IMG/VR virus record: IMGVR_UViG_3300028592_000004
Coordinates: 62,001-126,000 of that record
Direction: 5' to 3' (one strand)
DNA length: 64,000 nucleotides
The notes beneath the pieces were generated by a model that was given only the letters and a program-made list of their open reading frames with translations, was not told the DNA's origin and did no database searches. This document shows positions 9,058 through 23,206 of the stretch, in pieces. The position numbers and the translations under genes were made by a program. Each line of letters opens with the position of its first letter. Position 1 is the stretch's first letter.

Positions 9058-12000
9058 TCACTTCGCTTTCGGACAGAACTTATCCGGAATGCCCAGAGAC
9101 CGGACCTGGTCCTGGGTGAGCTCCTCACCCCAGTGCGTCATAATCTCGGCATCAAAGCCGAAATGGTAGGGCTTGGCGATCTCAATGTCGTCTCCGTGCA
9201 GCGTCTTCGGCCACACGTCAACGCCATAGACCAAGCAGGCCGGCAGAACCTCCTCAATCAACCACGGCAACGCCTTCGGGCTCAACTCGAACATCAGGGC
9301 GTCGTGGATCTGCAGCACCAGATGGAACCACTTCTTCGGACGCGACCCGTACTTTTCCCGGTACGCCAGCAAGTTATGGATGCCGATCGAAATCGCGTCC
9401 GCCACCGTCGACTGAATCGGGAAGTTGCAAGCCTGACGCTCCTGCTCAGCCAACTTTGCGCGATCGTCTGTGATCGCGAACCGCCGGTGTCGCATGAACG
9501 GATTGCAGATCCATCCCGGCTCGCTCACGCTGAACTTGCATTCCTCCAGGTACGGATAGGTCTCGGGGTAGAGGGTGAAGTAACCGTCGATCAGGCCCTG
9601 GGCCTCCTCGACTGTCAGCTCCGTCCCTTCTTCCTTCGACTTCCGCGCAATGGCGTCCGGACCAGACTGGTACGGAACACCGAAGTTCACGGTCTTCGCC
9701 CCGGTTCGCAGGTGGAGCTTGTTGATGCTCTTCAGTCCGCTCTTGTTCGGTGGGCAGTTCAGTTTGAACGCGGCCACAGCCGTTTGGGAGTGAAGATCGA
9801 GGTAGTCCTTGTGGTCCTCTGGCAGCAAGTTCCGCGACACGTCCGAGATCATCCGCGGATCCTGCGAAAGCCATGCCATCACGCACAGCTCCGCCGACTT
9901 CAAGTCGACTTCGACCAGGATCTTTCCGGGCGACGCACAGAGCATGCTCCGAATCGGGAAGGTGTACTTCGGGCCGACGATACGGGCATAGTCGCCCTCT
10001 CGCCGTTTTGAATTCCCGCAGATTGAAATCTTCCCCTCGCGGCGAACCACCAAATACGACGTCGGCACCTCCACGCAGTACACCGGACCCGAAAACGATT
10101 CGACAGTCTTCCTGATCGTCGACGTGAGCGTTGTGTTGCTCTTCATCGCCCGAACCCGATCGCTGTCGGCGTTGACGACGGCCTGCAGATTGTTCAGCGC
10201 GAAGATCGTCTGGACCCAGACCACCTGATCCTCATCAGCGGTGGTAAAGTCCCAATGGCGTCCCTTCCGAAACCAACGCTGGATCAGCTTCGGCAGAGCT
10301 GCAAATACCTCAGCCCGAAGCTGGAACACCCAGGAGCCGAATTCCAAGCCGGTCTTCGCCGCAAGATCACAGAGCCCCGGACTGTCCTCAAACTCGAAGA
10401 TCACCTGACGGTTCTCGCGAGTGAAGCGGTGTCGGAAGCCACTGAGGAAGGACAGGGCGGTGACGAGAGGTGTGATCAGATTGGACGCACAGGGAAGCGA
10501 AATTTTTCCGTTTCCCTTGGCGTCAAACTCCCCATAGCGCAGGAACGCCAGGAGAACGGTCAGAGATTCCGGCGAAAGCTCGACAGCCTCGGCTGGATCG
10601 ACCCCCTTGTACTGACCGCTGTGGAGATGAAGAAACCGCCAGTCTGTAGGGAAGTCCTTTGCTTCCACCTCACGAACACCGCCCTCATCGGTCCGGACAA
10701 GGCACCGGTGATTCGGCGTCACCCGAAGCGAGGTCGATCGAGACTCCAGTCGAACCAGATCGCCACGGTGGCTGAACTTCAGCAGATTCGTCTTGGCGAA
10801 GGAGATCTCACCCGTCTCGGAATCGTACTGAGCCACATGGAACGGTTTGCTCTTCGGCAGGTCGCAGACACGGCGCCAGCCGTCAGGCGTCAGAAACTCC
10901 GTGAAGTCGTCATAGCAGAGGTTCTGTAGATTCGGCCGGCTGGACGACACCCGTCCCGTTTCCACGGGATAGAAGTGCGTTCGCACACGACCGTCTGAGG
11001 CCACCGCAGCGAGCAGACCACCGGGGAAGACTTCGAAGTCGTCTTCGACGATGACCTGGCCCATGTCGTCCGTCTTTGGCGGGCGGAGCACACCCTTGAG
11101 CACCTGCGACACGAATCGGACGTCACGGAGCAAGCCGACCGTACCAGAGGTGTCCTGGTACGAGAGGATCCCCAGAACTTCCTTGTCGGTGCTGGGTGCG
11201 TACTCATGGGTCTTCTTCTGCTTGACAATCTTCTCCCAAGGCTGGGGACGCTTCCCCGCGGCCTTGATCGGAGTGAACTTCAGCGATTTGACCGTGAGCG
11301 GCAGGAACCGTTTTGCACCCTGAGTGCCGTTGTACTCCTCACCAAACAGCAGCTCGCGACACTGTGGCGCCGAGTTCGCATTGAACTCGTCGTATCTCAC
11401 CTTGTTCCGAAGCTCCTGCAGTTTGATGTCCTTCGCCTCCATGAAGATCTTCGTCAGGTAGCTGCCTCGCTCGCGGTCGACGTTCAGCCCACGCATCTCC
11501 ATCTCCAGGTAACCCGGGGAGGACATCATCGTGTGCAGGAACGCCTGACGAGAGCTACGACCGTACCGATCCTTGTCGAGCATGCCGGGCTTCTTGCCGC
11601 GGCCGTTGTACGCGCTGAACAGCCGACGTGTCCCGTCAGCGTCGTACATGCCGTAGGGATGAAGAATCCAGTTCGGACACTCGCCATATCCCTCCATGTT
11701 CTTCGCGGTCAGGTTATGCTTCTTGCAGAACCACTCCTTCCACTTCTGCAGAGCGTGGTCATACCGCGGCGTACCGACGTGCCGGACACACAGCGTCTCC
11801 AGCTTGAACTCGGCCGTCTCGCAGTGCGCATGCGCTGCAGCTCCTGTGTCGAAACCGCCGGACCACTTCGTCTGCTCTCCGCGCTCTTCGTCCGTGGCAT
11901 CATCATCAATCAGGTCGACCGCGAACTCGTCGCGAATGTCGATCCCGATGCTGAGGAGCCACGGAATGTCGGCACGGAGGAAGTGGCCGATGATCCGGAC

Positions 12001-13146
12001 CTTCCGCTTCTTCGTCGATTTCAGCAGACGATTGAGGTGATAGACAGCACGCGACAGCCCAGGCCGAAACGCGGGAACGCCACCCTGACTATGCAGGACC
12101 ACACAGACCGCCGACTTCGGCTTGTGGGAGAACTGGATGGTACGCAGGTAGGCTCCGGCGTCCTGGGGTCTCTCTCCGTGCCACTCGGCGTCGATTGCGA
12201 TGTTGAGCGACTCAGGATCCGGGTCGTTGATGATCTCGTCGACGATTGCTTCCAGATGGCGCTCCTTGAAGCACACAACGTGGCGAATGTCGTCTTCGAC
12301 GCGACCAGCGTACTTGCCGTTGACCAGGCCCCAGAACTGAGCCAAACCGTCGCGATGGTTTTCGTACTGCTCCGGTTGATGGAACACCGCAGACGGATGC
12401 GTAACGACCATCACCTTGGCCGTGTGGTATTTCGGCTCTTCGCCTTCCTGGTGCAGCGGGATGTTGTAGTCGGCGGTCATGCCGAACATCGTCCCAACGG
12501 CACCCGTCTTCCCGAGGAGCAGCTTGCCGGCCTCCGAACCGAAGCACAGGATGAACTTCGGCAGGATCAGCCGCATCTCCATTTCCAGGAGAGGCCGACA
12601 GTTCTTGACCCAATCCGTGGCCAAACCATCCGACGCCGGGTCGAGCTTCATGTGGTGGCAGATGTTGGTGACGTACCAGTTCTGCCAGTCCTCCGGCGGG
12701 ATCTGCACTTCGTCCAGAGCCCGATAGAGGTCAGACGCAGCCTGCCCAACGAAGTTCCGAAACTTGTCCACCTCGTCGATGCCGGGATGCTTGCCGATCA
12801 CCATCACGTCCGCCGGCCGCGGGCCATCCGGGTTTTCTTGTCCCCAGATATGGCCCGCGACGAACGGGACGTCTTTCACTGTCCGGGTCTTCTTGACCAC
12901 GATGTCCAGACAGAACTCGGGGTCGTACAAAGCTCGCCGGTACAGGTACTCCAGCCACTTGCCGTTTTCAACGACACGCTTCTTGTCGGACTTCCCATCC
13001 ACCTTGAGGGGAGCATCCCCGAGCAACTCTGCCGCACGAACAAAGTCCGGACCAGGCAGAGGCATCCCAGGCGCCGTGAACGGCACAATGGGGAACTCCT
13101 CCTCATCCATGAAGGGGAGGTCATTCTTGTCTGCTTTGGCAATCAT
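9058..13146 (-). CDS. polA: family A DNA polymerase with N-terminal UDG-like domain, 3'-5' exonuclease and an intein (SPO1-type architecture)
   Basis: UDG-like VMVIGKHPG..E...FVG and HPSAV; Exo IDAEW and YGMYDA; GRVSSSRPNLQN; motif A VDLKSAEL, motif B RTGAKTVNFGVPY, motif C LQIHDAL. Confidence 0.92.
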   Translation of the reverse strand: MIAKADKNDLPFMDEEEFPIVPFTAPGMPLPGPDFVRAAELLGDAPLKVDGKSDKKRVVENGKWLEYLYRRALYDPEFCLDIVVKKTRTVKDVPFVAGHIWGQENPDGPRPADVMVIGKHPGIDEVDKFRNFVGQAASDLYRALDEVQIPPEDWQNWYVTNICHHMKLDPASDGLATDWVKNCRPLLEMEMRLILPKFILCFGSEAGKLLLGKTGAVGTMFGMTADYNIPLHQEGEEPKYHTAKVMVVTHPSAVFHQPEQYENHRDGLAQFWGLVNGKYAGRVEDDIRHVVCFKERHLEAIVDEIINDPDPESLNIAIDAEWHGERPQDAGAYLRTIQFSHKPKSAVCVVLHSQGGVPAFRPGLSRAVYHLNRLLKSTKKRKVRIIGHFLRADIPWLLSIGIDIRDEFAVDLIDDDATDEERGEQTKWSGGFDTGAAAHAHCETAEFKLETLCVRHVGTPRYDHALQKWKEWFCKKHNLTAKNMEGYGECPNWILHPYGMYDADGTRRLFSAYNGRGKKPGMLDKDRYGRSSRQAFLHTMMSSPGYLEMEMRGLNVDRERGSYLTKIFMEAKDIKLQELRNKVRYDEFNANSAPQCRELLFGEEYNGTQGAKRFLPLTVKSLKFTPIKAAGKRPQPWEKIVKQKKTHEYAPSTDKEVLGILSYQDTSGTVGLLRDVRFVSQVLKGVLRPPKTDDMGQVIVEDDFEVFPGGLLAAVASDGRVRTHFYPVETGRVSSSRPNLQNLCYDDFTEFLTPDGWRRVCDLPKSKPFHVAQYDSETGEISFAKTNLLKFSHRGDLVRLESRSTSLRVTPNHRCLVRTDEGGVREVEAKDFPTDWRFLHLHSGQYKGVDPAEAVELSPESLTVLLAFLRYGEFDAKGNGKISLPCASNLITPLVTALSFLSGFRHRFTRENRQVIFEFEDSPGLCDLAAKTGLEFGSWVFQLRAEVFAALPKLIQRWFRKGRHWDFTTADEDQVVWVQTIFALNNLQAVVNADSDRVRAMKSNTTLTSTIRKTVESFSGPVYCVEVPTSYLVVRREGKISICGNSKRREGDYARIVGPKYTFPIRSMLCASPGKILVEVDLKSAELCVMAWLSQDPRMISDVSRNLLPEDHKDYLDLHSQTAVAAFKLNCPPNKSGLKSINKLHLRTGAKTVNFGVPYQSGPDAIARKSKEEGTELTVEEAQGLIDGYFTLYPETYPYLEECKFSVSEPGWICNPFMRHRRFAITDDRAKLAEQERQACNFPIQSTVADAISIGIHNLLAYREKYGSRPKKWFHLVLQIHDALMFELSPKALPWLIEEVLPACLVYGVDVWPKTLHGDDIEIAKPYHFGFDAEIMTHWGEELTQDQVRSLGIPDKFCPKAK
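10012..10917 (-). mobile_element. intein (~302 aa) in DNA polymerase with probably degenerate LAGLIDADG core
   Basis: Starts CYDDFTEFLTPDGW directly after PNLQNL; ends VYCVEVPTSYLVVRREGKISICGN followed by Ser. Confidence 0.9.
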
Positions 13147-14258
13147 GCAGCGCGATACCTTTCAAGGTCGAAGCCAGCCCGACTGGCGCTCGTTTCCGCC
13201 AACTCCCAGAAGAAGTCGCGGTCGATATCGCCAGGGTCGTGGTTGTCGGGAAGGGAGACATTGCAGATGCGATCATGCACGTGAGGACGCAGCTCCCGAA
13301 GCGTCCCCTCTACGTTGTCCTGAGCATCAGGGTCCAGAGCTACGACGATCGCACACTCGCCATCGAGTTGACCAGCCCACTGCCGGATGAGCGACAGGTG
13401 CTGAGCGGACAGCTTCTTGCCGAGGAGAGCAATCCCGTGCTCGGGACTAGCGTTCCACACGCCCGGCGCCCCTTCAACGATAACGAGCAGGGGCGTCCGA
13501 GAAGCGTGGTCCCAGTTGTAGAGCATCTTGCCCTTGGGCATACCCGGCATCCCGTAGTACTTCGGAATGACGGACCAGTTCTTCTCGCCCACGAACCGTC
13601 CCTGCCAGCCGACCCGCATCCCGTTCATATAGATGGGAATGATCAGCCGGCTGTCGCACGGAGCCCAACGATCGTCAGCCTCAGTGCAGAAACCGAGCAT
13701 GAACCGTCGCGAGACGTTCCACACATCGAATCCGCGGCTGGCCATGTACTTGAAGGCTTCGTGGTCTCGATCGAGTTTGTGGAGCGGGGTCACCGCACCA
13801 GGCAGGTCGACATAGGAGAGCTTCCGGCGATCCGTATCCGGCTTCTCCCCCTCTTCAACGCGGATCTTGCTTCGCACATTGCGGTTGACGTGCGCGAAGA
13901 CCGCCTCATTGAGCAGAGTCCGATTCTTCGTCTCCAGCATGCACTCTTCGTTGTAGCACCAGGCGACCCACCAGAGTGTCCGCCGCTCCCCGTTGTCCTG
14001 CCAGGGCTCCTCCAGTCCGTACCGATGGTTCACCCACAACCGCTTGCGGGTATCGTTACAGAATGGGCAGTTGACGCGGTAGTACTCGCCACTGGAGACG
14101 ATTTCCAACCGCATCTCATTCAACACTGGATCTCGCTTCCGAACGGCGACCATCGCCTGCCGTTCGTTTGCGACGATGATCTCCCCGAACCTGCGTTTCA
14201 GCCTTCCGTAGAGGAAGGAGTTCAGGGGCTTCGCAGTCTCCATCAGATCCCACTCCAC
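13143..14258 (-). CDS. DNA primase (Zn finger + TOPRIM)
   Basis: CPFCND, WC..EEC, LIIPIY..G..VGWQGR, VIVEGAPG, VVALDPDA. Confidence 0.85.
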   Translation of the reverse strand: MEWDLMETAKPLNSFLYGRLKRRFGEIIVANERQAMVAVRKRDPVLNEMRLEIVSSGEYYRVNCPFCNDTRKRLWVNHRYGLEEPWQDNGERRTLWWVAWCYNEECMLETKNRTLLNEAVFAHVNRNVRSKIRVEEGEKPDTDRRKLSYVDLPGAVTPLHKLDRDHEAFKYMASRGFDVWNVSRRFMLGFCTEADDRWAPCDSRLIIPIYMNGMRVGWQGRFVGEKNWSVIPKYYGMPGMPKGKMLYNWDHASRTPLLVIVEGAPGVWNASPEHGIALLGKKLSAQHLSLIRQWAGQLDGECAIVVALDPDAQDNVEGTLRELRPHVHDRICNVSLPDNHDPGDIDRDFFWELAETSASRAGFDLERYRAA

Positions 14259-15982
14259 GGTGTGCTGTCGTCAGTCGAACTTTCGGTGCGGCGCCGCCGG
14301 GTTCGCCCAGCTCGCCGGTGCCGTTCGCTCGGCCCGGAGTCCTCGTCATCGTCGATCACGCCGTGGATCGACTCAAAGGAGGTCCGCGGCACAATCTGGT
14401 TCGCTTCGTGGTCCAGAACGTACGCGTTCCGAACATCAAGCACGCGAGCGAACGCCCCGTCGAGGAGCATAAGAGTCTCTTGGCCGTCCGTTCCGGCACG
14501 GCGCGCCTTCGTACACTGCACCCGAGCTACACGGGTCTGCGGGTCCTTTTGCCCGATGCAGATACAGAAGTCGCAGTTTTCGCCGAAGGCTTTCGCGCCG
14601 CCGGCATCAGTGTGGTGCATGTCCCGGGTGGGGCCACGCTTGTTAGCCTCCCCGGTGTACTGGTGCAGCAACCAGAGCGGGGAGTTGAAGCGACGAGCAA
14701 CAGCCTTGCACTGCAAGGGCAGGCGGTTGATCGCCGCGTACATGTCAGAGGTCGTGTGCTGCTTGTTGGAGGCTTCGAGATGCCGGCGGGCCAGGGTGCC
14801 TGCGTAGTCAACGATGATGATCCCTGGTTCGACGCCGAGTTGATGGATGTCGCGCTCAATGATGCCTGCGATCTCATCCACGCCGCCAAAGCCGCGGCCA
14901 TCTGCACCCATGTCCCGAATCTGACAATTCTGGTTCAGTTCAGTCATGGCCTGTTGAGCACGTTCGTACTCACCGAGCATCAGGCTTTCATCGGCGTCGT
15001 CGATTCCGGCGAGCGCCATCTGCCAGTATTCCTGCTCGTACGGCTCCAGCTCGCTGCCGGTCCGTGTCAGGGTCTCCCAATCCGTATCTGCCTCCAGCCG
15101 ATCACGAAGGATGTGAGCGGCATTGGACAGGAGCCGAACGCGATACGCGTCGAGTCCGTCCTCATATCCGAAGTAGTAGGCATGCTTCAGCGGAGCTCCC
15201 GTCTCAAGATGCTCCTGCAGAAACGCCCGCGCCGATGCCACAGCCAACGCCAAGGCAATCGTCGTCTTTCCACCACCGTACGGTCCCAGGAGTCCGAAGA
15301 CTTCGCCAGGAATCTGTCCTCCGTTCAGGAACGCGTCCAGGAACGTGAGGTAGGTTGGCAGCCCGATCAGTCGCTTGGGCGACCAGTTCTTCGGGAAGAG
15401 CTCCTTGTTACTGCCCCGTACATCCAGCGATTCCACCAGCTGAGCCGAGATCTGTGCGGTCGCCAGGAACTGGCTGAGGTTCCGCGGAGTACTCTCGTGC
15501 AGCTGATCGTCGGTCAAAACCCGCCGCAGCGGATCCATCACGGCGTGTTTGGTCATGAACCGCTTCAACAGTTGCGCACCGTAGTCGTACTGAACATCCT
15601 CAGCGGCAATCCGCTTGAAGGCGTGAAACAGCAGACCAGGCTTCTTCTTGTTGGACGAGCGAGGGTCGTCCAGCAGCTTCGCAATCAGACGGCTGTCGAT
15701 CGCCGAATCCGAGTCATTCAGCAGGGACTCCACTTCATCGCGAACTGCGAGGTAGCGGATCCCGGGCTCCCCATACTCCTCCATCAGATCGCCGAGAGCG
15801 GTCCACAGGACGGCATACTCCGGGTGACCGGCGTCGTCCCAGTGGTGCGACTCGACCGTTCCGAGTGCTTGCCGCAGAAGCGACGGCATTCGAACCAGAT
15901 GGATGATCAGGGTCTGGAGCTCGCGATCGGTGATGTTGCGAGTGAGCCGCAGTTCCCTCTTTGCGTCCTCAATTCCCGCCAT
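14243..15982 (-). CDS. dnaB: DnaB-like replicative helicase (SF4)
   Basis: GPYGGGKTT Walker A, IIVDYAG Walker B, WLLHQ, KARR arginine finger; adjacent to primase. Confidence 0.85.
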   Translation of the reverse strand: MAGIEDAKRELRLTRNITDRELQTLIIHLVRMPSLLRQALGTVESHHWDDAGHPEYAVLWTALGDLMEEYGEPGIRYLAVRDEVESLLNDSDSAIDSRLIAKLLDDPRSSNKKKPGLLFHAFKRIAAEDVQYDYGAQLLKRFMTKHAVMDPLRRVLTDDQLHESTPRNLSQFLATAQISAQLVESLDVRGSNKELFPKNWSPKRLIGLPTYLTFLDAFLNGGQIPGEVFGLLGPYGGGKTTIALALAVASARAFLQEHLETGAPLKHAYYFGYEDGLDAYRVRLLSNAAHILRDRLEADTDWETLTRTGSELEPYEQEYWQMALAGIDDADESLMLGEYERAQQAMTELNQNCQIRDMGADGRGFGGVDEIAGIIERDIHQLGVEPGIIIVDYAGTLARRHLEASNKQHTTSDMYAAINRLPLQCKAVARRFNSPLWLLHQYTGEANKRGPTRDMHHTDAGGAKAFGENCDFCICIGQKDPQTRVARVQCTKARRAGTDGQETLMLLDGAFARVLDVRNAYVLDHEANQIVPRTSFESIHGVIDDDEDSGPSERHRRAGRTRRRRTESSTDDSTPWSGI

Positions 15983-16754
15983 AGCGCTTAGCTCCTTGCT
16001 GCAAGTTGCGTCGTGCAGCGTCGCGAAGGACCTTCGGAATCAAGTCGCCCCAGATCTGGTCGTACTGATCCCGCAGTGGTGTGTATTCGAGCAGAGCCGC
16101 GTTCTGAAACTGGGCCGCGATCTTGGCGTAGTTGCCAGCGTAGGCCATGCAGTATCGGAACAGCGGAGACAGCTCAATGCGGATGTCGAGCAGGGCGCGG
16201 ATCGCAGCCTGTTCTTCATCCATGTGATGATGCAGCGTGTTGAGCGAGAACCGCTGCCGAAGCAAGCGGTCGCACATCTCCAGCTTGCGCTGAAGCTCGT
16301 CCGGCACCCGACGCATCTCGTCTTCGTAGAGACCGAGCGCCTGAGCCGACATCAGATGGTTGACCTGAGGCGGCGTCGGTGAACGCCACTTCCGGAAAAT
16401 GCACTGCATGTATGGCAGCGGCTCGATCTGCCGATCCAGGAAAAAGTCCGCCAGCCGCAACATGGGCGACGGGACGTGGACCCTTCGATCAGAGATGTAG
16501 CCACCGTAGAGTTGAAGCTCCGTCCCCTTCTGGCCGTACGTGGATTCCTTGCCCGTCCGCGCGTAGTAAAACTCCCGGACCATCGAAGCGTACAGCCTCT
16601 GGAGCTGGACCACGAACGGATGCGACGTTCCGTCATCGTATTCATCGGACGAAGAGGAGTTTTTGACGGCCCGTGAGGTTCGGCCACCGCTGCTCGTATC
16701 CCTTCTTCCGGTAGATCCTCTTCCGCGTTTCGCCGGCACGTTTGAACCCCTCAT
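15969..16754 (-). CDS. hypothetical protein (start uncertain)
   Basis: Open frame between the two helicase genes; helicase-loader role possible from position only. Confidence 0.55.
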   Translation of the reverse strand: MRGSNVPAKRGRGSTGRRDTSSGGRTSRAVKNSSSSDEYDDGTSHPFVVQLQRLYASMVREFYYARTGKESTYGQKGTELQLYGGYISDRRVHVPSPMLRLADFFLDRQIEPLPYMQCIFRKWRSPTPPQVNHLMSAQALGLYEDEMRRVPDELQRKLEMCDRLLRQRFSLNTLHHHMDEEQAAIRALLDIRIELSPLFRYCMAYAGNYAKIAAQFQNAALLEYTPLRDQYDQIWGDLIPKVLRDAARRNLQQGAKRYGGN

Positions 16755-18189
16755 CCCAGAGATCGACAAAGTCGTCCAGTTCCCCAATCTGCTTTCCACT
16801 GTCCGGGTCGAGTCGATCGACACGGCCAGGCAACTGTTCGTCGTAGATCTCGCTTCCATTTCGAGCGTCAGCTCGACTGATCCTTGCCAGCTGCTCAAAG
16901 CTCACACCCTGAGACCAGCAGTTGGTCGAGATAACCTTCTTGAGCGTCCCGCGACGGAAGTCCTTGTACATCTCCTCGCGGTCGACTTCGGTCAGCTTGA
17001 CGTAGTCCTCCGGCAGGAGGCCCATCTTGTAGAACTTCTCCTGCTTCTTCCGATCGAGCGTGGAGTACATCAAGCTGTAGTGCGGCAGCATCTCGTGCAG
17101 GTGCAGGACATGCTCCAGAGCGTCGCACATGATGAGATGTTGCGACTTGGCCGGGATGCTTCGGGCGACGTTTGCAATCGCCTGATTGCGGAACTCATTC
17201 CGCCAGATCCCGAACCGTTTGGCCTCAATGCCCATCATCCGAGACCCGTCGCTGCCAACGATCGGGTTGTACCTCGAATGGACGTTGTGCCAGTTGACGA
17301 CAATCGGCAAGACGAGGCCCATGTCGCGGGCCTCAGCGTAGCGGATCGAGAAGATCTGCCGGCCGAATATCGCTTCGATGCGGATGTCCGTGCCGTCCTT
17401 ACGGCCCTCCGGAGTGGCCGTGAAGCCGAAGCATCGAGCCGAGCCTGTAATCTGAGCAAGGGACTCCGCGTGCTTGTCAGACACCAGAGCATGCACCTCG
17501 TCCACGATCAGGATGTCGATCTCCTCCTCATCCAGATGGTGCATCGAGTCTGCGCTGCAGACTGTGACGCGTCCCCGGCTCTTCTCGGTGCCGGTGATCA
17601 TCCCGACCGATGGCAGATACTCACACAGGTGGGAGTACGTCTTTCGAACGTTCGCCAGCCCGGGAATAACGATCGCGATCTTGGCCCAGCGGTACGCCAG
17701 GCAGAACGCCGCGAAACCATAGCTCTTACCGAAACCAGCCGCAGCGACAAGCACGCCGCACTCGTTGTCGATCATCGCCGCCAGCATCTCATCCTGGCGT
17801 TCCTTGAATTCGAAGTTCGCGACACAGTGCTCCAGATCCACCTCGAACGCACGCTTCCGCGGTGAGGGTGGAGTCGAGTCCTGGTAGTCGAGTTCGAAGC
17901 CGTGCCGCTCAATCTCTTCGAAGATGCGGAAGCGGAAGCCAGCAGGACAAAGGAGCCGATCGTTCCGCCCGAAGCGGTACATGTCGACCGCCTCAGTTCG
18001 AACCGGAACGTAGTCCCCTGCCTCTGTGTAGGCCTCTTTCCCATGCAGCGTCTGCACGTAGGTGTAGACGAGCTGGCGCCGCAGCGAAGCGTTCAGATCG
18101 GCCGGCAGGACGCCGCCGTTGTACGACACGTCGAGAGCGTTTTTGCGCCGGCGGACACAAATGGTCTTTGGCAAATTTCCGGTCTCCAT
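16642..18189 (-). CDS. superfamily 2 helicase (UvsW/Rad25-like)
   Basis: AAAGFGKS, IVDEVH, FTATPEGR, STNCWSQGV, QLPGRVDR. Confidence 0.85.
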   Translation of the reverse strand: METGNLPKTICVRRRKNALDVSYNGGVLPADLNASLRRQLVYTYVQTLHGKEAYTEAGDYVPVRTEAVDMYRFGRNDRLLCPAGFRFRIFEEIERHGFELDYQDSTPPSPRKRAFEVDLEHCVANFEFKERQDEMLAAMIDNECGVLVAAAGFGKSYGFAAFCLAYRWAKIAIVIPGLANVRKTYSHLCEYLPSVGMITGTEKSRGRVTVCSADSMHHLDEEEIDILIVDEVHALVSDKHAESLAQITGSARCFGFTATPEGRKDGTDIRIEAIFGRQIFSIRYAEARDMGLVLPIVVNWHNVHSRYNPIVGSDGSRMMGIEAKRFGIWRNEFRNQAIANVARSIPAKSQHLIMCDALEHVLHLHEMLPHYSLMYSTLDRKKQEKFYKMGLLPEDYVKLTEVDREEMYKDFRRGTLKKVISTNCWSQGVSFEQLARISRADARNGSEIYDEQLPGRVDRLDPDSGKQIGELDDFVDLWDEGFKRAGETRKRIYRKKGYEQRWPNLTGRQKLLFVR

Positions 18190-18268
18190 AGATGGAGACG
18201 CGCTTGCCTACGCCCGGTACAGAGTCTAAAGTACCCGCGCACACAGCACGTCCCCACGTCGCTGAAAC

Positions 18269-18299
18269 AGGCCCGGCAAGTTGGTCGCTTGCCGGGCCT
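18269..18299. terminator. perfect 12-bp hairpin downstream of the RAMP gene (terminator or processing site)
   Basis: AGGCCCGGCAAG-ttggtcg-CTTGCCGGGCCT; only short T-tracts on either side. Confidence 0.6.
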
Positions 18300-18302
18300 T
18301 CT

Positions 18303-18794
18303 TTATTGCTCTGCTTGTTCTTCAGCCACTGCTGACAGGTCTATCACCTCGAAGTTTCCGAACTGGCCAGGCTTGTAGGGGCTGATCCCCCTGTACTTGC
18401 CCGCCGTGTTGAGCAGGTCTCGGAGCTGAGCATCCGAGAGTTCCCGCGGTGCCATCAGCCCTATCTCGATCACTGCATCAATCGCGAAAGCCTCGTGGAT
18501 CGCGTACCGCTTCCTCCTCCCGGGTTCGGGGGCCTCTCGCAGGTAACGCCGTAGCTCGCTGACTGGCCCAGATACGACAGGGTCCCAGGACACGTTGCGA
18601 ACGACCGCCTGCGGCAGATTCAATCCTTTGGCTGCGAACAGTGTGATGGCACGCCACCAGGTAGGTGCGAAGAGCACCCGACCCTTGGAATCCCTGGGCA
18701 TACGGAAGACCACTTGCGTACCCTGTTCGGAGCGCACGTCTCCGTAACATGGCTGCAAAAATCGCAGTCTAGCCTTCAACTCCCGCATGACCAT
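18303..18794 (-). CDS. stand-alone RAMP (Cas7/Csm3-like) RNA-binding protein
   Basis: Beta1 RLRFLQPCYG, RDSKGRVLFAPTWW (cf. RD..G.P.IPGSS), HEAF..DAVIEI, and C-terminal G-rich loop AGKYRGISPYKPGQFGNFEV. Confidence 0.65.
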   Translation of the reverse strand: MVMRELKARLRFLQPCYGDVRSEQGTQVVFRMPRDSKGRVLFAPTWWRAITLFAAKGLNLPQAVVRNVSWDPVVSGPVSELRRYLREAPEPGRRKRYAIHEAFAIDAVIEIGLMAPRELSDAQLRDLLNTAGKYRGISPYKPGQFGNFEVIDLSAVAEEQAEQ

Positions 18795-18806: not shown

Positions 18807-18878
18807 TCCGTCGAGGAGCCGATGTTAAGCGCCGGCTCGATTCTGGTCAAACACACCTTCACCAACCGTCGCAGCGGC

Positions 18879-19820
18879 CTATGAATGGTGGGTTTCCGGC
18901 TTCCAGGACTCAACATGCTGTGTGAACGCTTTACACACCAGCGGATCGTGGAAGAAGTAGTCCGGCACAAACAGCCGATCCCCCTTCCGTTCCACAACCG
19001 CGTCAGTCCACGTCCGGCACAGGAAGCTCATGAGGAGCTTGCAGACCCGCAGCTCGGCATGCGTCTTGTTCAGCCGGCACTGCCGCCAGAGGAAGTTCCG
19101 GGGATCCTCCAGCTGCGCGGCGGTCGGACCCGGCTGCCACTGCCAGGAGTTCAACACCAGCTTGGCTCGATCATTCGGCCCGTACGGTCGCTTCGCTCTC
19201 CCTAGCACCCACGCCATCGTCTGAGGGTTCATCCCCATGTACTGCATGACGCAGGACAGACTGTCAGGCTTGTCCCGCTTCACGTACCACCGGGGATCCC
19301 GGATCGCAGCCACGATACGAGCCAGAGCCGCTGTATCGTGATACCGGAAGAAGCTCCACATCTTCGCCGCCGGATGCGTCCAGAGCATGTTCCGGAGCTC
19401 ACTCTCCGGACGCTTCTGGGCGATCGCATCGGCGAGCGCGTAGGGGACATATTCGACAGCGGACATGACGTGCCACCCTCCCATCGAAGAGGGGAGGCCT
19501 TCGAGCTCACGAGCACGAAGAATAGCAATCCGCGGGTCGTCCATCTCAGCCGCGGTCAAAGACAGTCGTGGCGTGCACAGCTCAATAGGAGCCTGCGTCG
19601 CCACGAACAGTCTGGCAATCAGGACCGAGTTCGATGCAGAGGCAATCACCCGAAACCGCTTGCCACGGCTAATCGTGGGCGTCTCCATGAGAGCGTCCAC
19701 ATTCTCAGCGGCAAGGACCGGCGGGTGTTCGCCGTTCGCGCACCAAACTTGGCCCGTGGGGCACACATGCAGCTTCACGCTCGCGACGTCCGTCACTGCA
19801 CGGCTCGACTTAATCGACAT
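18879..19820 (-). CDS. IS110/Nop-domain-derived protein (Tas-like) with eroded RuvC-like N-domain
   Basis: ARIVAAIRDPRWY...CVMQYMGMNP (cf. AA.I.AEIGD..RF...L.SY.GL.P) and HAELRVCKLLMSFLCRTW (cf. HA..R..K.FL..LW); no DEDD acids and no catalytic SG. Confidence 0.55.
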   Translation of the reverse strand: MSIKSSRAVTDVASVKLHVCPTGQVWCANGEHPPVLAAENVDALMETPTISRGKRFRVIASASNSVLIARLFVATQAPIELCTPRLSLTAAEMDDPRIAILRARELEGLPSSMGGWHVMSAVEYVPYALADAIAQKRPESELRNMLWTHPAAKMWSFFRYHDTAALARIVAAIRDPRWYVKRDKPDSLSCVMQYMGMNPQTMAWVLGRAKRPYGPNDRAKLVLNSWQWQPGPTAAQLEDPRNFLWRQCRLNKTHAELRVCKLLMSFLCRTWTDAVVERKGDRLFVPDYFFHDPLVCKAFTQHVESWKPETHHS

Positions 19821-22062
19821 CAACTTTCCTTCTCCGACGACGTTCTTCTTTGATTCGTGCGACGGGGTGCAGGTCAATCATGTGGTCGAACATAGCCGAA
19901 AGACGCGGTTCGTGCGTCACGATCAAGCACTGAAGGCCTGTGGAAGCGGAAAGCTCCCTCAGACGCTCCACTGTCGGTGCCAGAGCCAGCACGTTCTCCT
20001 CGTCGAGGAACTGCGTGGGCTCATCCAGCGTCAACAGACCCAGGTCCTGGGTGAACAACGTGATGCGGGCTACACGAACCAGAATTCCGAGCAGGACTTT
20101 CTGGCCACCTGAGATTCGATCTGCAACTTGCTCCCGGCCGTCAAGGAACCGAGCAGCAAAGGTGAGTCCATCCGCTTGCCCGATCCTGAAATTCGCATCG
20201 ATCCGATGCAGAAGGTCGTTCGTGTCCTCCGCAATCATCGACAAGTAATCGGCAGCCACGATCTTCGGCAGTTCGAGCATCACCTCCCTCACGGAAGAGA
20301 TGTCCCGCTTCAACCGGATCAGGGCATTGCCGTTCTCCGCCCGAACCTTTGCAGATTCCAGGCGGGCCGTCAGAGTCTTCCGCGTCTTGTCCAGGGACGT
20401 GATCTCCCCTTCCAGACCAGATCGCTCCAGCAGTCGCTTCTTCTTTTCTTCGATCTTCTCCCGAGCTTCAGTCAGCTTCTTGGGATCGACCGCCTTTGGC
20501 TGACCGGCCAGCAACTTGTGCCTCCGGTCCTTCAAGGACTTGAGCGTCGCCTTTGCAGCGGTCACGTCCTTGTCGTGAGTCTGAACGTCCTTCTCGGCCT
20601 CCTGAATTTCGAGGAACACGTCCGAGTGATCCTCCTTCTTCTGAGCGAGAGTCTCTGTCAGCTCTTCATAGGTTGAGACCAGCTCTTCGAGCGTCTCCTT
20701 GTCGCCCTTCGGCGCGGCGGGGACGACAGTCTCTTCCAGTTGATCCTTCGTTCGATGGAAGTCCCTCTGGAGCTCCGCCAGCGCACGGTGCCGCTCAGCG
20801 AAGGCCTGATCGTGCTTACGAGATTTGGCCAGGACCTGCTCCGCAGTGCCGAGCTTGAAAACGAGTTCCTCAACACGATCGTCAGCAGAGTCTGCAATCT
20901 CATAGATTTTCGCCAGCAGCCCAGTCGGATTCCGGACCCGGACATACTGATTGACCAGATCCGAAATATACCTCGTGCTGGCGTATTCCCTGTCGAGCGT
21001 TTCTGTGTAGCTGTCGCGCTCTTCCTCAGGAACATAGTTTTTCGGGCGTTCGGGATCGCCAGCCTCTCGCAGAGTCTTGAGCTGCGCCTGCAACTCCTTG
21101 AGGCGCTTGGCAACCTTCTCTTTGGCCTCAGCAGCACGCTGGTAGGCGGAGAAGTTCTTGAGCACAGCCCGGGCGTCATCAACGTCCGCCTGCGACTCAG
21201 CGAGACCCTGCTCAGTGGCCGTGATCTCGTTATCGATGGCACGGATCTTAGTCCGAAGCTGATCCACCTCATCGGCTGCAGAGGTGTCCTCTTCCAGCTC
21301 CTGGACCTTCTTCTCCTGGGCTGCAATGTCGCGTAGCAGCTGGTCGGCATCGGCCTGAATCCGATCGTACGACTCCTGCTGCTTGATCAACGTCTGAAGC
21401 GGGTCCGCTTCGACGTCGTACCCTTCGACATCCCGATACCGCTTGAGGCTTGAGCCGGCCTTACGAGCGGACGCCTCGTTCTCCGCGAGGGAGCCCTCAA
21501 TCGTTCGGATCTCCACATCGGGATCTCCGATCTCAATTGAGGGGAGCCAGTCAGCAATCGCTTTTGCGACGAGCTCAGCCGCCTTAGTGCCGAACATCGA
21601 CTGGAAGGACTGAAGCCGAACCGCGGGCGTCTGATCGATGAAGTCGTACAGCCGACCCTGCCCGATAAAGCAGTTGTCGGAGATGAGCCGCATGTCGGCT
21701 CCGAGAATACGACCGATCTCAGCCGAGACTTCCGTCTCGCCGAACAGGGGCTTGCCGCCGTTGACCGTCATCTGGGTCTTGCACTTCTGCAAGCCCCGGA
21801 CAATCTCCAGGCGGTCGCCGGCGTGGGTCATGTTCAGAACACCGTAGGACTTCGCACCCTCGGGCGCGAGCGTACAGATGTTCGACTCCTTGACACCGGC
21901 GTTGGTGGTGAAGTCGCCAGTGATCAGCCACTGGACGATCTTCAGGATGCTGCTCTTCCCTGAGCCGTTTGGGCCGACGATTCCATTGATCCCCGGCTTG
22001 AAGTCCACCGACAGCTTGCGGTGGTAGCAGACTTCGAAAGCATCCAGGTGCTCAAGATTCAT
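19810..22062 (-). CDS. sbcC: SbcC/Rad50-like SMC ATPase
   Basis: GPNGSGKSS, long coiled coil, ISGGQK, LDEPTQFLD, IVTHE. Confidence 0.9.
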   Translation of the reverse strand: MNLEHLDAFEVCYHRKLSVDFKPGINGIVGPNGSGKSSILKIVQWLITGDFTTNAGVKESNICTLAPEGAKSYGVLNMTHAGDRLEIVRGLQKCKTQMTVNGGKPLFGETEVSAEIGRILGADMRLISDNCFIGQGRLYDFIDQTPAVRLQSFQSMFGTKAAELVAKAIADWLPSIEIGDPDVEIRTIEGSLAENEASARKAGSSLKRYRDVEGYDVEADPLQTLIKQQESYDRIQADADQLLRDIAAQEKKVQELEEDTSAADEVDQLRTKIRAIDNEITATEQGLAESQADVDDARAVLKNFSAYQRAAEAKEKVAKRLKELQAQLKTLREAGDPERPKNYVPEEERDSYTETLDREYASTRYISDLVNQYVRVRNPTGLLAKIYEIADSADDRVEELVFKLGTAEQVLAKSRKHDQAFAERHRALAELQRDFHRTKDQLEETVVPAAPKGDKETLEELVSTYEELTETLAQKKEDHSDVFLEIQEAEKDVQTHDKDVTAAKATLKSLKDRRHKLLAGQPKAVDPKKLTEAREKIEEKKKRLLERSGLEGEITSLDKTRKTLTARLESAKVRAENGNALIRLKRDISSVREVMLELPKIVAADYLSMIAEDTNDLLHRIDANFRIGQADGLTFAARFLDGREQVADRISGGQKVLLGILVRVARITLFTQDLGLLTLDEPTQFLDEENVLALAPTVERLRELSASTGLQCLIVTHEPRLSAMFDHMIDLHPVARIKEERRRRRKVDVD

Positions 22063-23206
22063 CGTCTTCCTCTTCCTCCTCATCGACCGTAGTGATCACC
22101 TCGGTCTGGATTTTCTTCAGCTCATCGAGCACGGCGTTCTTGCTTTCTGCAATCTCCAGCAAGCGCCGGCACAGCCTGTACTCATCGGATCCCTTCGGCG
22201 TCGCTCGCTCAAGGAACGAGAGCAGACTGGTGCGTTGACCGACGCGGTCCTTCGTCTTCTCGATCCGAACGACCTTTGAACCTGTCGGCCGCGGAGAGAG
22301 GAACACGTGGGCCTGATTGTCGAACGCCGTCATCAGGCGGTCGTACACGTCAGGCAGGTTATCGGGATAGTCCACGTGGATGATCGGCGTACGGACCACC
22401 TCCGGAATATCGTCGTCGTAGAAGTTGCCCTCCTTCGCGTCCTCGCACAGATCGTCCAGTCCACCGATGTCATCGAGGCTGAAGGTGTGGAAGGGGCGAG
22501 TGATGAGCTTCACCGACTTGTAGTCGACGAGCTTGTTCCTGTTGAACTCCAGCTCCCAGAAGGCCTTTTCGGGCGGCTCGTCGATCGACTGCATGCACGT
22601 CGATCCTGGAGAGAAGACACGCAACGTCGAGCCGTCCTCGCGCTTCAGCTTCACCGTCTTGTGCTGATGGAGATCCCCAGTCAGAACGACCGGAGCAGGG
22701 CAGTCTTCGAGTTGACCTTCGACGCCGGGCAGGGTGCCCATGAAGTCAGGTCCACCCCAAACCTGGTGACAGACGAACAGACCGATCTGGAGGTCAGCAG
22801 CCTCTTCAAGCTCGGTGAGAAGCTGGTGAGACGCCTGCCAGTCCAGGCCGTACATCTTCAGGCCACCGATAGTGACGAGCCTGCGATGAAAGTGACGCGG
22901 CCAGGGATGAGCATCGAACCGGGCGCGAACCGCGTTCCGCTCGTGCTGACCCTGAATGAAGTAGAACGGAATCCCAGCTTCCTGCAGCCTGTCGAACTGC
23001 TCGTGAGCCTGGACCTGAATGCTGGGAGTCGGATCCACCGTATCGATCAGGTCACCGGCGCCGATGACGGCGTCGACCTTCTCTTCAACGGCCCGATCCA
23101 CGATTTGCTTCAGAGAGAAAACTGCATCGCCAGCCAGATCCGGGTGACGACGCCAGGCACGCTCCTGAAGGTGCCAGTCTGAGGTGGACAGGAGACGAAT
23201 CGACAC
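22052..23206 (-). CDS. sbcD: SbcD/Mre11-like metallophosphoesterase nuclease
   Basis: SDWHL, GAGDLID, QGQHE, TGDLHQH; coupled to sbcC. Confidence 0.9.
   Translation of the reverse strand: MSIRLLSTSDWHLQERAWRRHPDLAGDAVFSLKQIVDRAVEEKVDAVIGAGDLIDTVDPTPSIQVQAHEQFDRLQEAGIPFYFIQGQHERNAVRARFDAHPWPRHFHRRLVTIGGLKMYGLDWQASHQLLTELEEAADLQIGLFVCHQVWGGPDFMGTLPGVEGQLEDCPAPVVLTGDLHQHKTVKLKREDGSTLRVFSPGSTCMQSIDEPPEKAFWELEFNRNKLVDYKSVKLITRPFHTFSLDDIGGLDDLCEDAKEGNFYDDDIPEVVRTPIIHVDYPDNLPDVYDRLMTAFDNQAHVFLSPRPTGSKVVRIEKTKDRVGQRTSLLSFLERATPKGSDEYRLCRRLLEIAESKNAVLDELKKIQTEVITTVDEEEEEDDES

What the first reader, a model, noticed from the sequence alone, without database searches (positions are those of the whole stretch)
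18303..18794. Stand-alone minimal RAMP (Cas7/Csm3-like) gene with no CRISPR array or other cas gene in the window
Seen: the 163-aa protein carries the RAMP signature series in order: beta1+Pro+Gly (RLRFLQPCYG), RD..G-aromatic-P helix (RDSKGRVLFAPTWW), thumb and beta strand (HEAF..DAVIEI), and a C-terminal glycine-rich loop (GKYRGISPYKPGQFGNFEV). Established: RAMPs are the RNA-binding backbone of class 1 CRISPR effectors and polymerise on guide RNA. Inference: this is a phage-domesticated, CRISPR-independent RNA-binding filament protein, possibly RNA-guided or an anti-CRISPR decoy. As I recall, stand-alone phage RAMPs with GGY/NN-repeat RNAs (VIPR-type) have been reported recently, but I find no such repeats here, so this may be a different subtype.
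Basis: partly seen in the sequence, partly recalled or inferred. Interest (0 to 1): 0.85.

Follow-up and report, generated by a model that had tools for sequence, protein, structure and literature searches.

The report
Array-less Vipr-like RAMP in phage replication module
A small gene in an uncultured 229-kb phage encodes a Cas7-like RAMP protein related to the recently described phage "Vipr" proteins, but it has no guide-RNA repeat array nearby and sits, vertically inherited, inside the DNA replication/recombination gene block, so it is probably a Vipr relative doing a different, still unknown job.

Summary
Window 18303-18794 (-) is a real 163-aa ORF (likely start M3, 161 aa). Its AlphaFold model (pLDDT 95.9) matches Cas7-type RAMPs in the PDB (128 hits at E<=1e-3; all 50 listed are RAMP subunits).

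The family comprises 163 clusters at 50% identity, all from metagenomes or viral contigs. At sequence level it links only to Vipr proteins:
- hhalign gives 95% probability.
- The family HMM hits 20 array-flanked Viprs and nothing else.
- The only PHROG hit is phrog_4652, the SUSP1 Vipr family.

It is not a canonical VIPR system:
- No period-4 to 8 repeat array occurs in the window, in 99 kb of the source contig, or beside about 20 relatives. The same scan recovers all SUSP1 vrRNAs.
- Two of the three G-loop GGY contacts are replaced.
- No accessory gene co-varies with it.

The gene always lies between SbcCD and an XPB-like helicase. It co-diverges with that helicase (Mantel r 0.90) and was lost at least six times.

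Best reading: a Vipr-lineage binder of single-stranded nucleic acid, co-opted as a dispensable accessory of the replication/recombination module. The mechanism is inferred. It is a new variant of a known kind.

The parts
18303..18794 (-). Vipr-like stand-alone RAMP gene (163-aa ORF; probable start at 18788, giving 161 aa)
   Evidence: ORF. AF2 model pLDDT 95.9. Foldseek: Cas7-type RAMPs. hhalign to the Vipr profile 95.1%. Only PHROG hit is phrog_4652, the SUSP1 Vipr family. Start codon.
18822..18850 (-). Sigma-70-like promoter match (TTGACC-17-TAACAT) just upstream of the RAMP gene
   Evidence: Consensus scan: 1 found against 0.2 expected. A consensus match only; function not shown.
18269..18299 (.). 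GC-rich 12-13 bp hairpin immediately after the RAMP stop codon (terminator-like)
   Evidence: Analogous hairpins follow the RAMP stop in L001, L003, L004, L009, L011 and L014.
18190..18257 (-). Second long hairpin in the RAMP-helicase spacer, ending at the helicase start codon
   Evidence: The whole spacer 18190-18302 folds with z = -6.6; 0 of 200 shuffles fold as well. Not conserved in loci where the RAMP gene abuts the helicase gene. Any link to the RAMP is unproven.
16642..18189 (-). XPB/Rad25-like SF2 helicase, the constant downstream neighbour (context)
   Evidence: Pfam ResIII 1.5e-11 and phrog_16. PDB XPBII 5e-11. Synteny. Co-divergence with the RAMP, Mantel r 0.90.
18879..19877 (-). 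Unknown 332-aa protein, frequent upstream neighbour (context; present whether or not the RAMP is)
   Evidence: No family hit. Present in 18/18 RAMP-plus and 11/12 RAMP-minus clade members.
19810..23206 (-). SbcC-like (19810-22083) and SbcD-like (22052-23206) nuclease genes, upstream flank of the slot (context)
   Evidence: In L019 and L021 the RAMP gene directly follows SbcC.
9058..16898 (-). Rest of the replication block: UDG-exo-PolA fusion (9058-13146), primase (13143-14258), DnaB-like helicase (14243-15982), unknown 309-aa protein (15969-16898) (context)
   Evidence: Syntenic in all relatives.

Best explanation
**What it is.** The gene encodes a minimal single-domain RAMP of the Vipr lineage. 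It has an RRM-like core, helix-1, a thumb-like basic hairpin and a glycine-rich loop.

**History.** It belongs to a distinct, array-less clade. The clade was acquired once by a lineage of large uncultured phages. Since then it has been inherited vertically in one fixed slot of the replication/recombination block, between SbcCD (with or without a 332-aa unknown) and an XPB-like SF2 helicase. It was lost repeatedly.

**Inferred mechanism.**
- It still binds single-stranded nucleic acid through the RAMP surface. Conserved candidates are helix-1 W46/W47, thumb R83 and H100/E101, and G-loop aromatics Y134, Y140 and F145.
- It does not read a locally encoded GGY/NN repeat guide.
- It acts as a dispensable accessory of the phage's own DNA metabolism, coating or holding RNA or ssDNA intermediates (primers, R-loops, resected ends) handled by the neighbouring helicase and nuclease.

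**Shown:** fold, homology to Vipr, absence of arrays, synteny, co-divergence with the helicase, repeated loss.

**Inferred:** nucleic-acid binding, oligomerisation, guide independence, and any link to replication or recombination.
For: **Fold**
- AF2 model: pLDDT 95.9, pTM 0.88.
- Foldseek PDB: 128 hits at E<=1e-3; all 50 listed are RAMP subunits, mostly Cas7-type plus Cmr1; TM 0.44-0.62 normalised to the query.
- The best BFVD hits are phage proteins, including one named as a RAMP superfamily protein.

**Vipr homology**
- The family profile's top PDB hit is the SUSP1 Vipr protein.
- hhalign of the family against a 61-sequence Vipr profile: 95.1%, E 3.2e-8.
- The family HMM hits 20 array-adjacent ORFs at E 2e-8 to 1e-3. 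All 20 are also hit by the Vipr HMM. Alignments cover both the helix-1 block and the alpha2/G-loop/beta4 block.
- The Vipr HMM hits only this ORF in the window.
- The only PHROG hit is phrog_4652, which the SUSP1 Vipr matches at 1e-96.

**No guide array**
- No period-4, 5, 7 or 8 array rises above shuffle level, and the only period-6 signals are coding acidic repeats. This holds for the window, the related loci, and 99.4 kb of the source contig.
- The same scan scores 24/24 on all four SUSP1 vrRNAs and on one array in Gordonia phage Trine.
- In L021 the gene is flanked within 16 nt on both sides.

**Context**
- The order SbcD-SbcC-(u332)-RAMP-helicase-(u309)-DnaB-primase-PolA is kept down to 23-24% protein identity.
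- All RAMP-plus loci fall in one helicase clade with 98% support (18 plus, 12 minus; at least 6-7 state changes).
- RAMP-minus loci hold no remnant of the gene.
- Pairwise identities of RAMP and helicase correlate: Mantel r 0.90, 0 of 2000 permutations as high.
- No other gene co-varies with RAMP presence.

**Conserved surface residues:**
Against: - Nothing here shows binding to any nucleic acid, or oligomerisation.
- Only 43% of the 229-kb contig was scanned, so a distal guide RNA cannot be excluded.
- At least six independent losses, plus the gene's own promoter-like and terminator-like signals, resemble a moron or accessory gene. That fits a conflict function as well as a replication accessory.
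- Canonical Viprs can also sit among replication genes: Trine gp41 lies between Pol I and a primase/helicase, and SUSP1 Vipr lies next to a ligase. Location alone is therefore weak evidence of function.
- The window protein itself keeps aromatic-basic-Pro (Y140-K141-P142) in the G-loop, like Vipr W178-R179-P180. Sequence-specific RNA reading may survive.
- The window already encodes SSB-like, RecA-like and RNase H genes, so there is no obvious functional gap for the RAMP to fill.
Confidence: 0.5

Rival explanations
1. It is a bona fide VIPR effector. Its vrRNA(s) are encoded far from the gene in the unscanned 57% of the genome, or use a repeat pattern too degenerate for my scans. It silences competitor DNA by RNA-guided binding, perhaps with the neighbouring helicase acting as a vap-like partner.
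For: - Clear homology to Vipr.
- The window protein keeps Y140-K141-P142, matching Vipr W178-R179-P180.
- The VIPR paper reports types whose accessory genes are helicases or nucleases, degenerate repeats (NNNNG) and single-vrRNA systems.
- Repeated loss and moron-like signals fit a conflict gene.
Against: - All described VIPR types have vrRNAs next to the vipr gene. Here there are none within about 37 kb on one side and about 62 kb on the other in the source contig, and none within 6-10 kb in about 20 distinct relatives. This includes single-column period-5 scans, with positive controls.
- The equivalents of D177 and R179, and apparently of H17, are not conserved.
- The helicase and u332 are present whether or not the RAMP is.
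- The gene co-diverges with a replication helicase over deep time.
Confidence: 0.2
2. It is a regulatory RNA-binding protein, analogous in role to T4 RegA. It would be a small, dispensable translational repressor or RNA chaperone encoded inside the replication cluster, binding leaders of replication-gene mRNAs such as the structured helicase leader.
For: - RAMPs bind single-stranded RNA (established).
- The gene sits directly upstream of the helicase.
- In the window the spacer is strongly structured and its second hairpin ends at the helicase ATG.
- Dispensability fits repeated loss.
- The analogy with T4 regA rests on my own knowledge, not on a tool result.
Against: - The structured spacer is not conserved. 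In many relatives the RAMP gene abuts or overlaps the helicase gene.
- No sequence motif shared by leaders was found in the window.
- There is no homology to RegA.
Confidence: 0.12
3. It is a RAMP-type ribonuclease (Cas6- or Cas5d-like in role). The near-invariant H100/E101 pair would be catalytic, for example for processing primers or transcripts.
For: - H100 (97%) and E101 (98%) are the most conserved polar residues.
- Several RAMP families are metal-independent RNases that use a His (my own knowledge).
Against: - Fold hits are to backbone Cas7-type subunits, not Cas6.
- The Csm3/Cmr4-type catalytic Asp after beta1 is not conserved: position 19 is N/S/A in the family.
- By position, H100 may simply replace the thumb Arg (R138) that holds a flipped base in SUSP1 Vipr. 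This is inference only, because the region is not aligned by hhalign.
Confidence: 0.08
4. It is a counter-defence decoy. A guide-less Cas7/Vipr mimic would poison host class 1 CRISPR complexes or a competitor's VIPR filaments, or would sequester their RNAs.
For: - Structural mimicry of Cas7.
- Patchy presence with repeated loss, and its own promoter and terminator.
- VIPR systems are reported to target each other.
Against: - It diverges at the same rate as the helicase (mean pairwise identity 0.48 against 0.46) and in step with it.
- The slot stays fixed across phages that are only 23-45% identical. This is unlike the rapidly exchanged anti-defence genes I know of.
- The GGY-binding residues needed to sponge vrRNAs are mostly lost.
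- No PADLOC hit.
Confidence: 0.07
5. It is not a RAMP at all. On this reading it is a generic ferredoxin-like or RRM fold with a chance glycine-rich loop.
For: - No Pfam, NCBIfam or PADLOC RAMP model is hit.
- Sequence identity to PDB RAMPs is only 7-17%.
Against: - All 50 listed PDB fold hits are RAMPs with probability 1.00.
- Independent sequence-profile links point only to Vipr.
Confidence: 0.03

Closest known systems
Vipr proteins of VIPR systems (type II prototype: Escherichia phage SUSP1 Vipr, PDB 36pp; phrog_4652; bioRxiv 10.64898/2026.04.26.720920 and 10.64898/2026.04.26.720927)
   Same: - Phage-encoded, single-domain minimal RAMP outside any CRISPR locus.
- Detectable sequence homology in the helix-1 block and the alpha2/G-loop/beta4 block.
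- The G-loop glycines and the aromatic residue equivalent to W178 are conserved.
   Different: - Shorter: about 145-175 aa against about 190-230 aa.
- No vrRNA array beside the gene, or within tens of kb (against the control).
- The D177 equivalent is Pro (94%). The R179 equivalent is not conserved. No conserved His follows beta1 at the place of H17 (my reading of the consensus; that region is not aligned by any tool).
- No co-varying vap gene.
- Inherited vertically within a replication/recombination module.
- Absent from GenBank phages (tblastn). Also absent from 185,579 reference genomes, though that scan used only two narrow peptide patterns.
Cas7-family backbone subunits of class 1 CRISPR effectors (Cmr4, Csm3, type VII Cas7, Cas7-11 domains)
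   Same: Best structural matches among solved structures (E 8e-7 to 7e-5, query-normalised TM about 0.44-0.62): RRM core, G-rich loop, thumb-like hairpin.
   Different: - No sequence-level match to any CRISPR RAMP model.
- No CRISPR array or cas genes.
- No conserved catalytic Asp after beta1.
- Much smaller, without the lid or other insertions.
T4 RegA (functional analogy only, from my own knowledge)
   Same: A small, dispensable nucleic-acid-binding protein encoded inside a phage replication gene cluster.
   Different: Unrelated fold and sequence. No evidence here for translational repression.

Membership tests
RAMP superfamily (Cas5/6/7-like) | RRM/ferredoxin-like beta-alpha-beta-beta-alpha-beta core | tested here: met
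   The AF2 model (pLDDT 95.9) has beta1 3-12, helix 44-57, strands 69-116, helix 121-134 and beta4 148-155. All 50 listed Foldseek PDB hits are RAMPs, probability 1.00.
RAMP superfamily (Cas5/6/7-like) | Glycine-rich loop between alpha2 and beta4 | tested here: met
   G132 (98%), G136 (100%) and G146 (100%) are conserved across 111 homologues, lying between helix 121-134 and strand 148-155.
RAMP superfamily (Cas5/6/7-like) | Thumb hairpin that intercalates into the bound nucleic acid | tested here: inconclusive
   The model has a hairpin (69-75, 79-84), a basic loop 85-96 and conserved R83. I could not superpose coordinates on Cas7 or Vipr to confirm equivalence.
CRISPR-Cas class 1 effector subunit (Cas7/Csm3/Cmr4) | Encoded with a CRISPR array and other cas genes | tested here: not met
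   No CRISPR-like repeats. No Rfam hit. No cas family among about 36 proteins scanned. About 28 smaller ORFs were not scanned.
CRISPR-Cas class 1 effector subunit (Cas7/Csm3/Cmr4) | Catalytic Asp in the loop after beta1 (target RNA cleavage in type III) | tested here: not met
   The window protein has D19, but the family column is N 41%, S 20%, A 15%.
VIPR system | Vipr-type RAMP protein (homology to described Viprs) | tested here: met
   - hhalign 95.1%, E 3.2e-8.
- The family HMM hits 20 array-flanked Viprs and nothing else.
- The Vipr HMM hits the target at E 3.9e-4.
- Top PDB sequence hit is the SUSP1 Vipr protein.
- Only PHROG hit is phrog_4652.
- Homology is local, about 75 of 163 residues.
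VIPR system | vrRNA: tandem pentanucleotide repeats (YNNGG or a related fixed/variable pattern) flanking the vipr gene | tested here: not met
   - Zero YNNGGx4 in the window, against 0.14 expected.
- No period-4, 5, 7 or 8 array above shuffle level, and only coding acidic repeats at period 6, in the window, in 99.4 kb of the contig, or in the loci of relatives.
- The scan finds SUSP1 and Trine arrays at the maximal score.
- 57% of the contig was not scanned.
VIPR system | Residues that lock the GGY motif (SUSP1 H17, R138, D177, W178, R179) | tested here: not met
   - These residues are 92-100% conserved in SUSP1-type Viprs.
- In the target family the D177 equivalent is P (94%).
- The W178 equivalent is aromatic (86%).
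- The R179 equivalent is G/R/K mixed.
- The H17 and R138 regions are not alignable.
VIPR system | Dedicated accessory gene (vap) in a minimal two-gene locus | tested here: not met
   No gene within 6 kb either side co-varies with RAMP presence. The helicase and u332 occur with or without it.
VIPR system | Protein oligomerises on the RNA and binds dsDNA targets | not testable with these tools
   Requires biochemistry or cryo-EM.
Anti-CRISPR / anti-defence protein | Inhibits a host or competitor defence system | not testable with these tools
   No PADLOC hit. The evolutionary pattern argues weakly against it.

The most novel reading that the evidence does not exclude
The array-less clade preserves, or has reverted to, a guide-independent function of the ancestral RAMP. 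On this reading it is a binder of single-stranded nucleic acid that works with a helicase and nuclease in viral DNA replication or recombination. That would mean the RNA-guided VIPR and CRISPR RAMPs grew out of a replication accessory protein. A variant of this reading: it promotes R-loop or triplex formation at the phage's own DNA, without a repeat-coded guide, to help origin opening or recombination.
Probability: 0.1. Interest if true: 0.9.

Novelty: new variant of a known kind. Interest (0 to 1): 0.66.

Why it matters
VIPR systems were described only in 2026. They are proposed to predate CRISPR, and every described type pairs the Vipr protein with an adjacent pentanucleotide-repeat guide RNA. 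This family differs in three ways:
- It is large (163 clusters at 50% identity), metagenome-only and clearly Vipr-related, yet it has no such RNA nearby.
- It lacks most of the GGY-locking residues.
- It has been carried vertically inside a phage replication/recombination block.

If it works without a guide, it shows what a RAMP does outside RNA-guided targeting, and it bears on how guide-dependent RAMPs arose. If instead it uses a distal or unconventional guide, it extends the VIPR repertoire to a new architecture. Either way it is a compact, well-folded protein (161 aa, pLDDT 96) that can be tested directly in E. coli.

Tried and rejected
**Searches that found nothing**
- Pfam, NCBIfam and PADLOC on the protein and on all 111 homologues: no RAMP or cas model hit.
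- phmmer of the single sequence against the PDB: nothing.
- tblastn of the RAMP, and of the helicase, against 50,697 GenBank phages: no match. PolA matches only T5-like phages, at about 24% identity.
- Scan of 185,579 reference genomes with the 5-sequence alignment: no relative, but the scan used only two narrow peptide patterns.

**Guide-RNA tests**
- Looked for a conserved RNA in the RAMP-helicase spacer. Terminator-like hairpins and a second hairpin are common. However, the spacer disappears in many relatives, so it is not a conserved partner.
- Looked for a shared hairpin or box motif in other intergenic regions of the window: none seen.
It is uninformative for that purpose, but it supplied canonical VIPR loci that served as controls.

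**Ideas dropped**
- "Strictly core replisome gene" was rejected: 12 of 30 clade members lack it and carry no remnant.
- The idea that u332 or the helicase is a RAMP-specific partner was rejected, because both occur without it.

**Steps that failed**
- The search for related loci with the 111-sequence alignment failed because no stretch was conserved enough.
- The supplements of the VIPR paper, which list the Vipr types, are not held. I therefore could not check directly whether this clade is among the 2,664 published Viprs. It has no NCBI-sourced member in the two protein searches.
Full report
**1. The observation**

The functional start is probably the second ATG (M3, position 18788, 161 aa). 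88% of homologues begin there, and the identical database protein P0001 is 161 aa.

A sigma-70-like promoter match (TTGACC-17-TAACAT, 18850-18822) precedes the gene, and a 12-13 bp GC-rich hairpin (18269-18299) follows the stop codon. No Pfam, NCBIfam or PADLOC model matches. The only PHROG hit is a weak one to phrog_4652 (E 0.015, C-terminus).

**2. The protein is a RAMP**

An exhaustive HMMER search of 1.84 billion cluster representatives found 163 clusters at E<=1e-3 and 110 at E<=1e-10. A word-indexed search of 5.8 billion proteins found only four relatives, all from JGI or Logan metagenomes.

An AlphaFold2 model built on 111 homologues is very confident (pLDDT 95.9, pTM 0.88). It has the order beta1 / two-strand insertion / helix-1 / four strands / helix-2 / glycine loop / beta4.

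Foldseek against the PDB returns 128 hits at E<=1e-3. All 50 listed are RAMP subunits, mostly Cas7-type plus Cmr1: Cmr4 (6s6b_I, 8e-7), Csm3, type VII Cas7, Cas7-11/gRAMP domains and Cmr1. Probability is 1.00 and query-normalised TM is 0.44-0.62. Against predicted viral structures the best hits are three phage proteins (1.5e-8 to 3e-6), one of them named a RAMP superfamily protein.

- F12, L17 and G18
- R34 (98% K/R)
- W46/W47 at the start of helix-1
- R83
- H100/E101 (97-98%)
- G132/G136/G146 (98-100%)
- S138/P139
- aromatic residues at 134, 140 and 145

**3. At sequence level it is a Vipr relative**

VIPR systems are real and recent (bioRxiv 10.64898/2026.04.26.720920; structures in 10.64898/2026.04.26.720927). 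Five lines of evidence tie the family to Vipr:
- A profile of the family searched against all PDB sequences gives "SUSP1 Vipr protein" (36pp_D) as top hit. The E-value is borderline (0.05), and the match covers helix-2, the G-loop and beta4.
- I recovered the SUSP1 gene (L017:2539-3126) and a Gordonia phage Trine homologue, collected 529 Vipr homologues and aligned 61 of them (A3). Profile-profile comparison of the two families gives 95.1% probability, E 3.2e-8, over 43 columns.
- I fetched about 117 canonical VIPR loci from IMG/VR with a GG-period-5 pattern. The target-family HMM, run over 6,835 stop-to-stop segments of all held loci, hits its own family plus 20 further ORFs (E 2e-8 to 1e-3). 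Every one of the 20 is also hit by the Vipr HMM, and alignments of the five best cover the helix-1 block as well as the C-terminal block.
- Conversely, the Vipr HMM hits the target ORF (E 3.9e-4) and nothing else among 542 window segments.
- phrog_4652 is the SUSP1-type Vipr family: SUSP1 matches at 1.4e-96 and Trine gp41 at 5e-62.

**4. It is not a canonical VIPR locus**

I scanned for YNNGG and NNNGG runs and for any period-4 to 8 array with one, two or three fixed columns. I also ran Tandem Repeats Finder, the paper's own low threshold of four YNNGG units (0 found, 0.14 expected) and a six-unit GG pattern with one mismatch (chance level, inside a coding gene).

No period-4, 5, 7 or 8 signal rises above shuffles, and the only period-6 signals are coding acidic repeats. 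This holds for the 64-kb window, for 6-10 kb each side of about 20 distinct relatives, and for two further stretches on each side of the window in the source contig.

By walking with the search for related loci I covered contig positions 43,056-142,469, which is 99.4 kb or 43% of IMGVR_UViG_3300028592_000004. The gene lies at about 80.3 kb.

The scan is sensitive. It recovers all four SUSP1 vrRNAs, and a (GGCNN)n array next to Trine gp41, at the maximal score of 24/24. The target loci stay at 17-19, which is the shuffle level.

In several relatives the gene is packed tightly. In L021 it is 16 nt from SbcC and abuts the helicase. In about ten IMG/VR loci the gap to the helicase is 26 nt or less. 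No conserved adjacent non-coding RNA is therefore possible.

The residues that lock the GGY motif in SUSP1 are H17, R138, D177, W178 and R179. They are 92-100% conserved in SUSP1-type Viprs (counting D/E at 177 and any aromatic at 178). In the target family:
- the D177 equivalent is Pro (94%);
- the R179 equivalent is mixed G/R/K;
- only the aromatic W178 equivalent is kept (86% Y/F/W).

The window protein itself retains Y140-K141-P142.

No CRISPR array, Rfam family, tRNA or second RAMP is present. None of about 36 proteins scanned against Pfam is a cas protein.

**5. Context and evolution**

The window is part of a 229-kb viral contig. It carries a replication/recombination block on the minus strand:
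- RecA-like gene
- UDG-exo-PolA fusion
- primase
- DnaB-like helicase
- a 309-aa unknown
- XPB/Rad25-like SF2 helicase
- the RAMP
- a 332-aa unknown
- SbcC and SbcD
- sugar-nucleotide and glycosyltransferase genes
- SSB-like gene, ThyX, ligase and RNase H

The order SbcD-SbcC-(u332)-RAMP-helicase-(u309)-DnaB-primase-PolA recurs in every relative examined, down to RAMP identities of 24%.

Anchoring on the helicase instead gave 78 IMG/VR loci with 61 distinct helicases. The RAMP is present in 18 of the 61. All 18 fall in one clade of 30 with 98% local support, and the window's phage is its earliest branch. Twelve clade members lack the gene, which requires at least 6-7 changes on the tree. This was a FastTree run with some long branches, so it indicates clustering rather than an exact count.

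RAMP-less members have no remnant of the gene. The slot is empty or holds unrelated small genes.

Among RAMP-plus loci, pairwise identities of RAMP and helicase are tightly correlated (Mantel r 0.90; 0 of 2000 permutations as high) and have similar means (0.48 against 0.46). No other gene within 6 kb either side co-varies with the RAMP. The helicase, u332 and SbcCD occur with or without it.

The picture is one old acquisition, vertical inheritance at the pace of a replication gene, and repeated loss.

The lineage has no cultured relative:
- The RAMP and the helicase have no tblastn match in 50,697 GenBank phages.
- PolA matches T5-like phages at about 24% identity.
- The scan of 185,579 reference genomes found nothing, although it used narrow patterns.

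**6. How it most likely works**

Shown: a Vipr-lineage RAMP fold, no local guide array, partial loss of the GGY-reading residues, a fixed slot next to an XPB-like helicase and SbcCD, co-divergence with the helicase, and dispensability.

Inferred: it still binds single-stranded nucleic acid with the RAMP surface. The most conserved exposed-type residues are aromatic and basic and sit on helix-1, the thumb region and the G-loop. In SUSP1 Vipr these are the elements that contact RNA.

I further infer that it does so without a repeat-coded guide, as an optional accessory to the phage's own replication or recombination intermediates. I give this 0.5.

The rivals are:
- a canonical VIPR with a distal or cryptic guide (0.2);
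- a RegA-like regulator of replication-gene mRNAs (0.12);
- an H100/E101 ribonuclease (0.08);
- a Cas7/Vipr decoy (0.07);
- a non-RAMP look-alike (0.03).

Weaknesses of the preferred reading:
- No binding data exist.
- 57% of the genome is unscanned.
- Canonical Viprs also sit among replication genes.
- The gene's own promoter and terminator signals and its repeated loss would suit a conflict gene equally well.

**7. Comparison, novelty and verdict**

The protein is a member of the RAMP superfamily by fold and G-loop, and of the Vipr protein lineage by local sequence homology. It fails three defining features of a VIPR system: an adjacent vrRNA, the GGY-locking residues and a dedicated vap gene. 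It also fails the defining context of a CRISPR Cas7.

The VIPR papers held in the library do not mention array-less or replication-module Viprs. Their supplementary lists are not available.

I rate it a new variant of a known kind, with interest 0.66. It is not categorically new, because VIPR is published. It is nonetheless a large, unexplored and experimentally tractable clade whose behaviour could show what RAMPs do without guides.

Noticed in passing
window 9058-13146 (-): The DNA polymerase is a 1362-aa fusion of UDG, 3'-5' exonuclease and PolA. It has a weak intein-splicing-domain hit at residues 762-833. Relatives carry the same fusion at only 846-879 aa (L019, L021), so this copy has about 480 extra residues, possibly an intein.
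   Followed up: no
window 24238-27515 (-) and 52389-54224 (-): Sugar-nucleotide and glycosyltransferase genes sit inside or near the DNA-metabolism block. They include an RGP-like GT, a GT2-like protein, a PfkB kinase fused to a cytidylyltransferase-like domain (similar to heptose kinase/adenylyltransferase) and a GT9 heptosyltransferase-like protein. They could serve DNA glycosylation or surface modification.
   Followed up: no
window 18190-18257 (-); also L001, L007/L008, L009/L011/L014 upstream of the helicase gene: The spacer before the helicase gene is strongly structured (z -6.6 for 18190-18302). Several relatives also show a hairpin followed by a short (C/T)A(A/G)GC-like box upstream of the helicase start, which might be a regulatory or promoter element. 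It is absent where the RAMP gene abuts the helicase gene.
   Followed up: partly
L018:3167-3241 (Gordonia phage Trine, NC_047991): Trine gp41 is a SUSP1-type Vipr (phrog_4652, 5e-62). A (GGCNN)n vrRNA-like array lies immediately downstream, inside the annotated hypothetical CDS gp40, which may therefore be mis-annotated. The Vipr sits between DNA polymerase I and a primase/helicase.
   Followed up: partly
window 55872-56702 and 62093-63967 (-): Collagen-like Gly-X-Y repeat proteins (Pfam Collagen 8e-34 for 62093-63967) account for the period-9 DNA repeats at 56.1-56.5 kb and 63.0-63.8 kb.
   Followed up: no
window 50631-50775 (-) and 51007-51315 (-): RNAfold predicts a long imperfect hairpin in an intergenic region and, nearby, a strong terminator-like hairpin with a long T run. 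The repeat finder with 9-nt seeds did not report the inverted repeat, so its significance is unclear.
   Followed up: partly
L146:4132-5651, L173:4144-5551: In RAMP-less relatives the slot between SbcC/u332 and the helicase holds unrelated small genes. By eye these look like a ClpS-like protein, a pyrimidine-dimer-glycosylase-like protein, a cupin-like protein and a ThiF-like protein followed by tandem ubiquitin-like repeats. The slot therefore behaves as a variable insertion hotspot. These names come from reading the sequences, not from a family search.
   Followed up: no
window 27769-28995 (-), 6169-7758 (-), 40255-40527 (-): Long acidic (D/E-rich) tracts in several proteins, including the SSB-like one, produce the period-3, -6 and -9 DNA repeats that dominate the repeat finders.
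   Followed up: no
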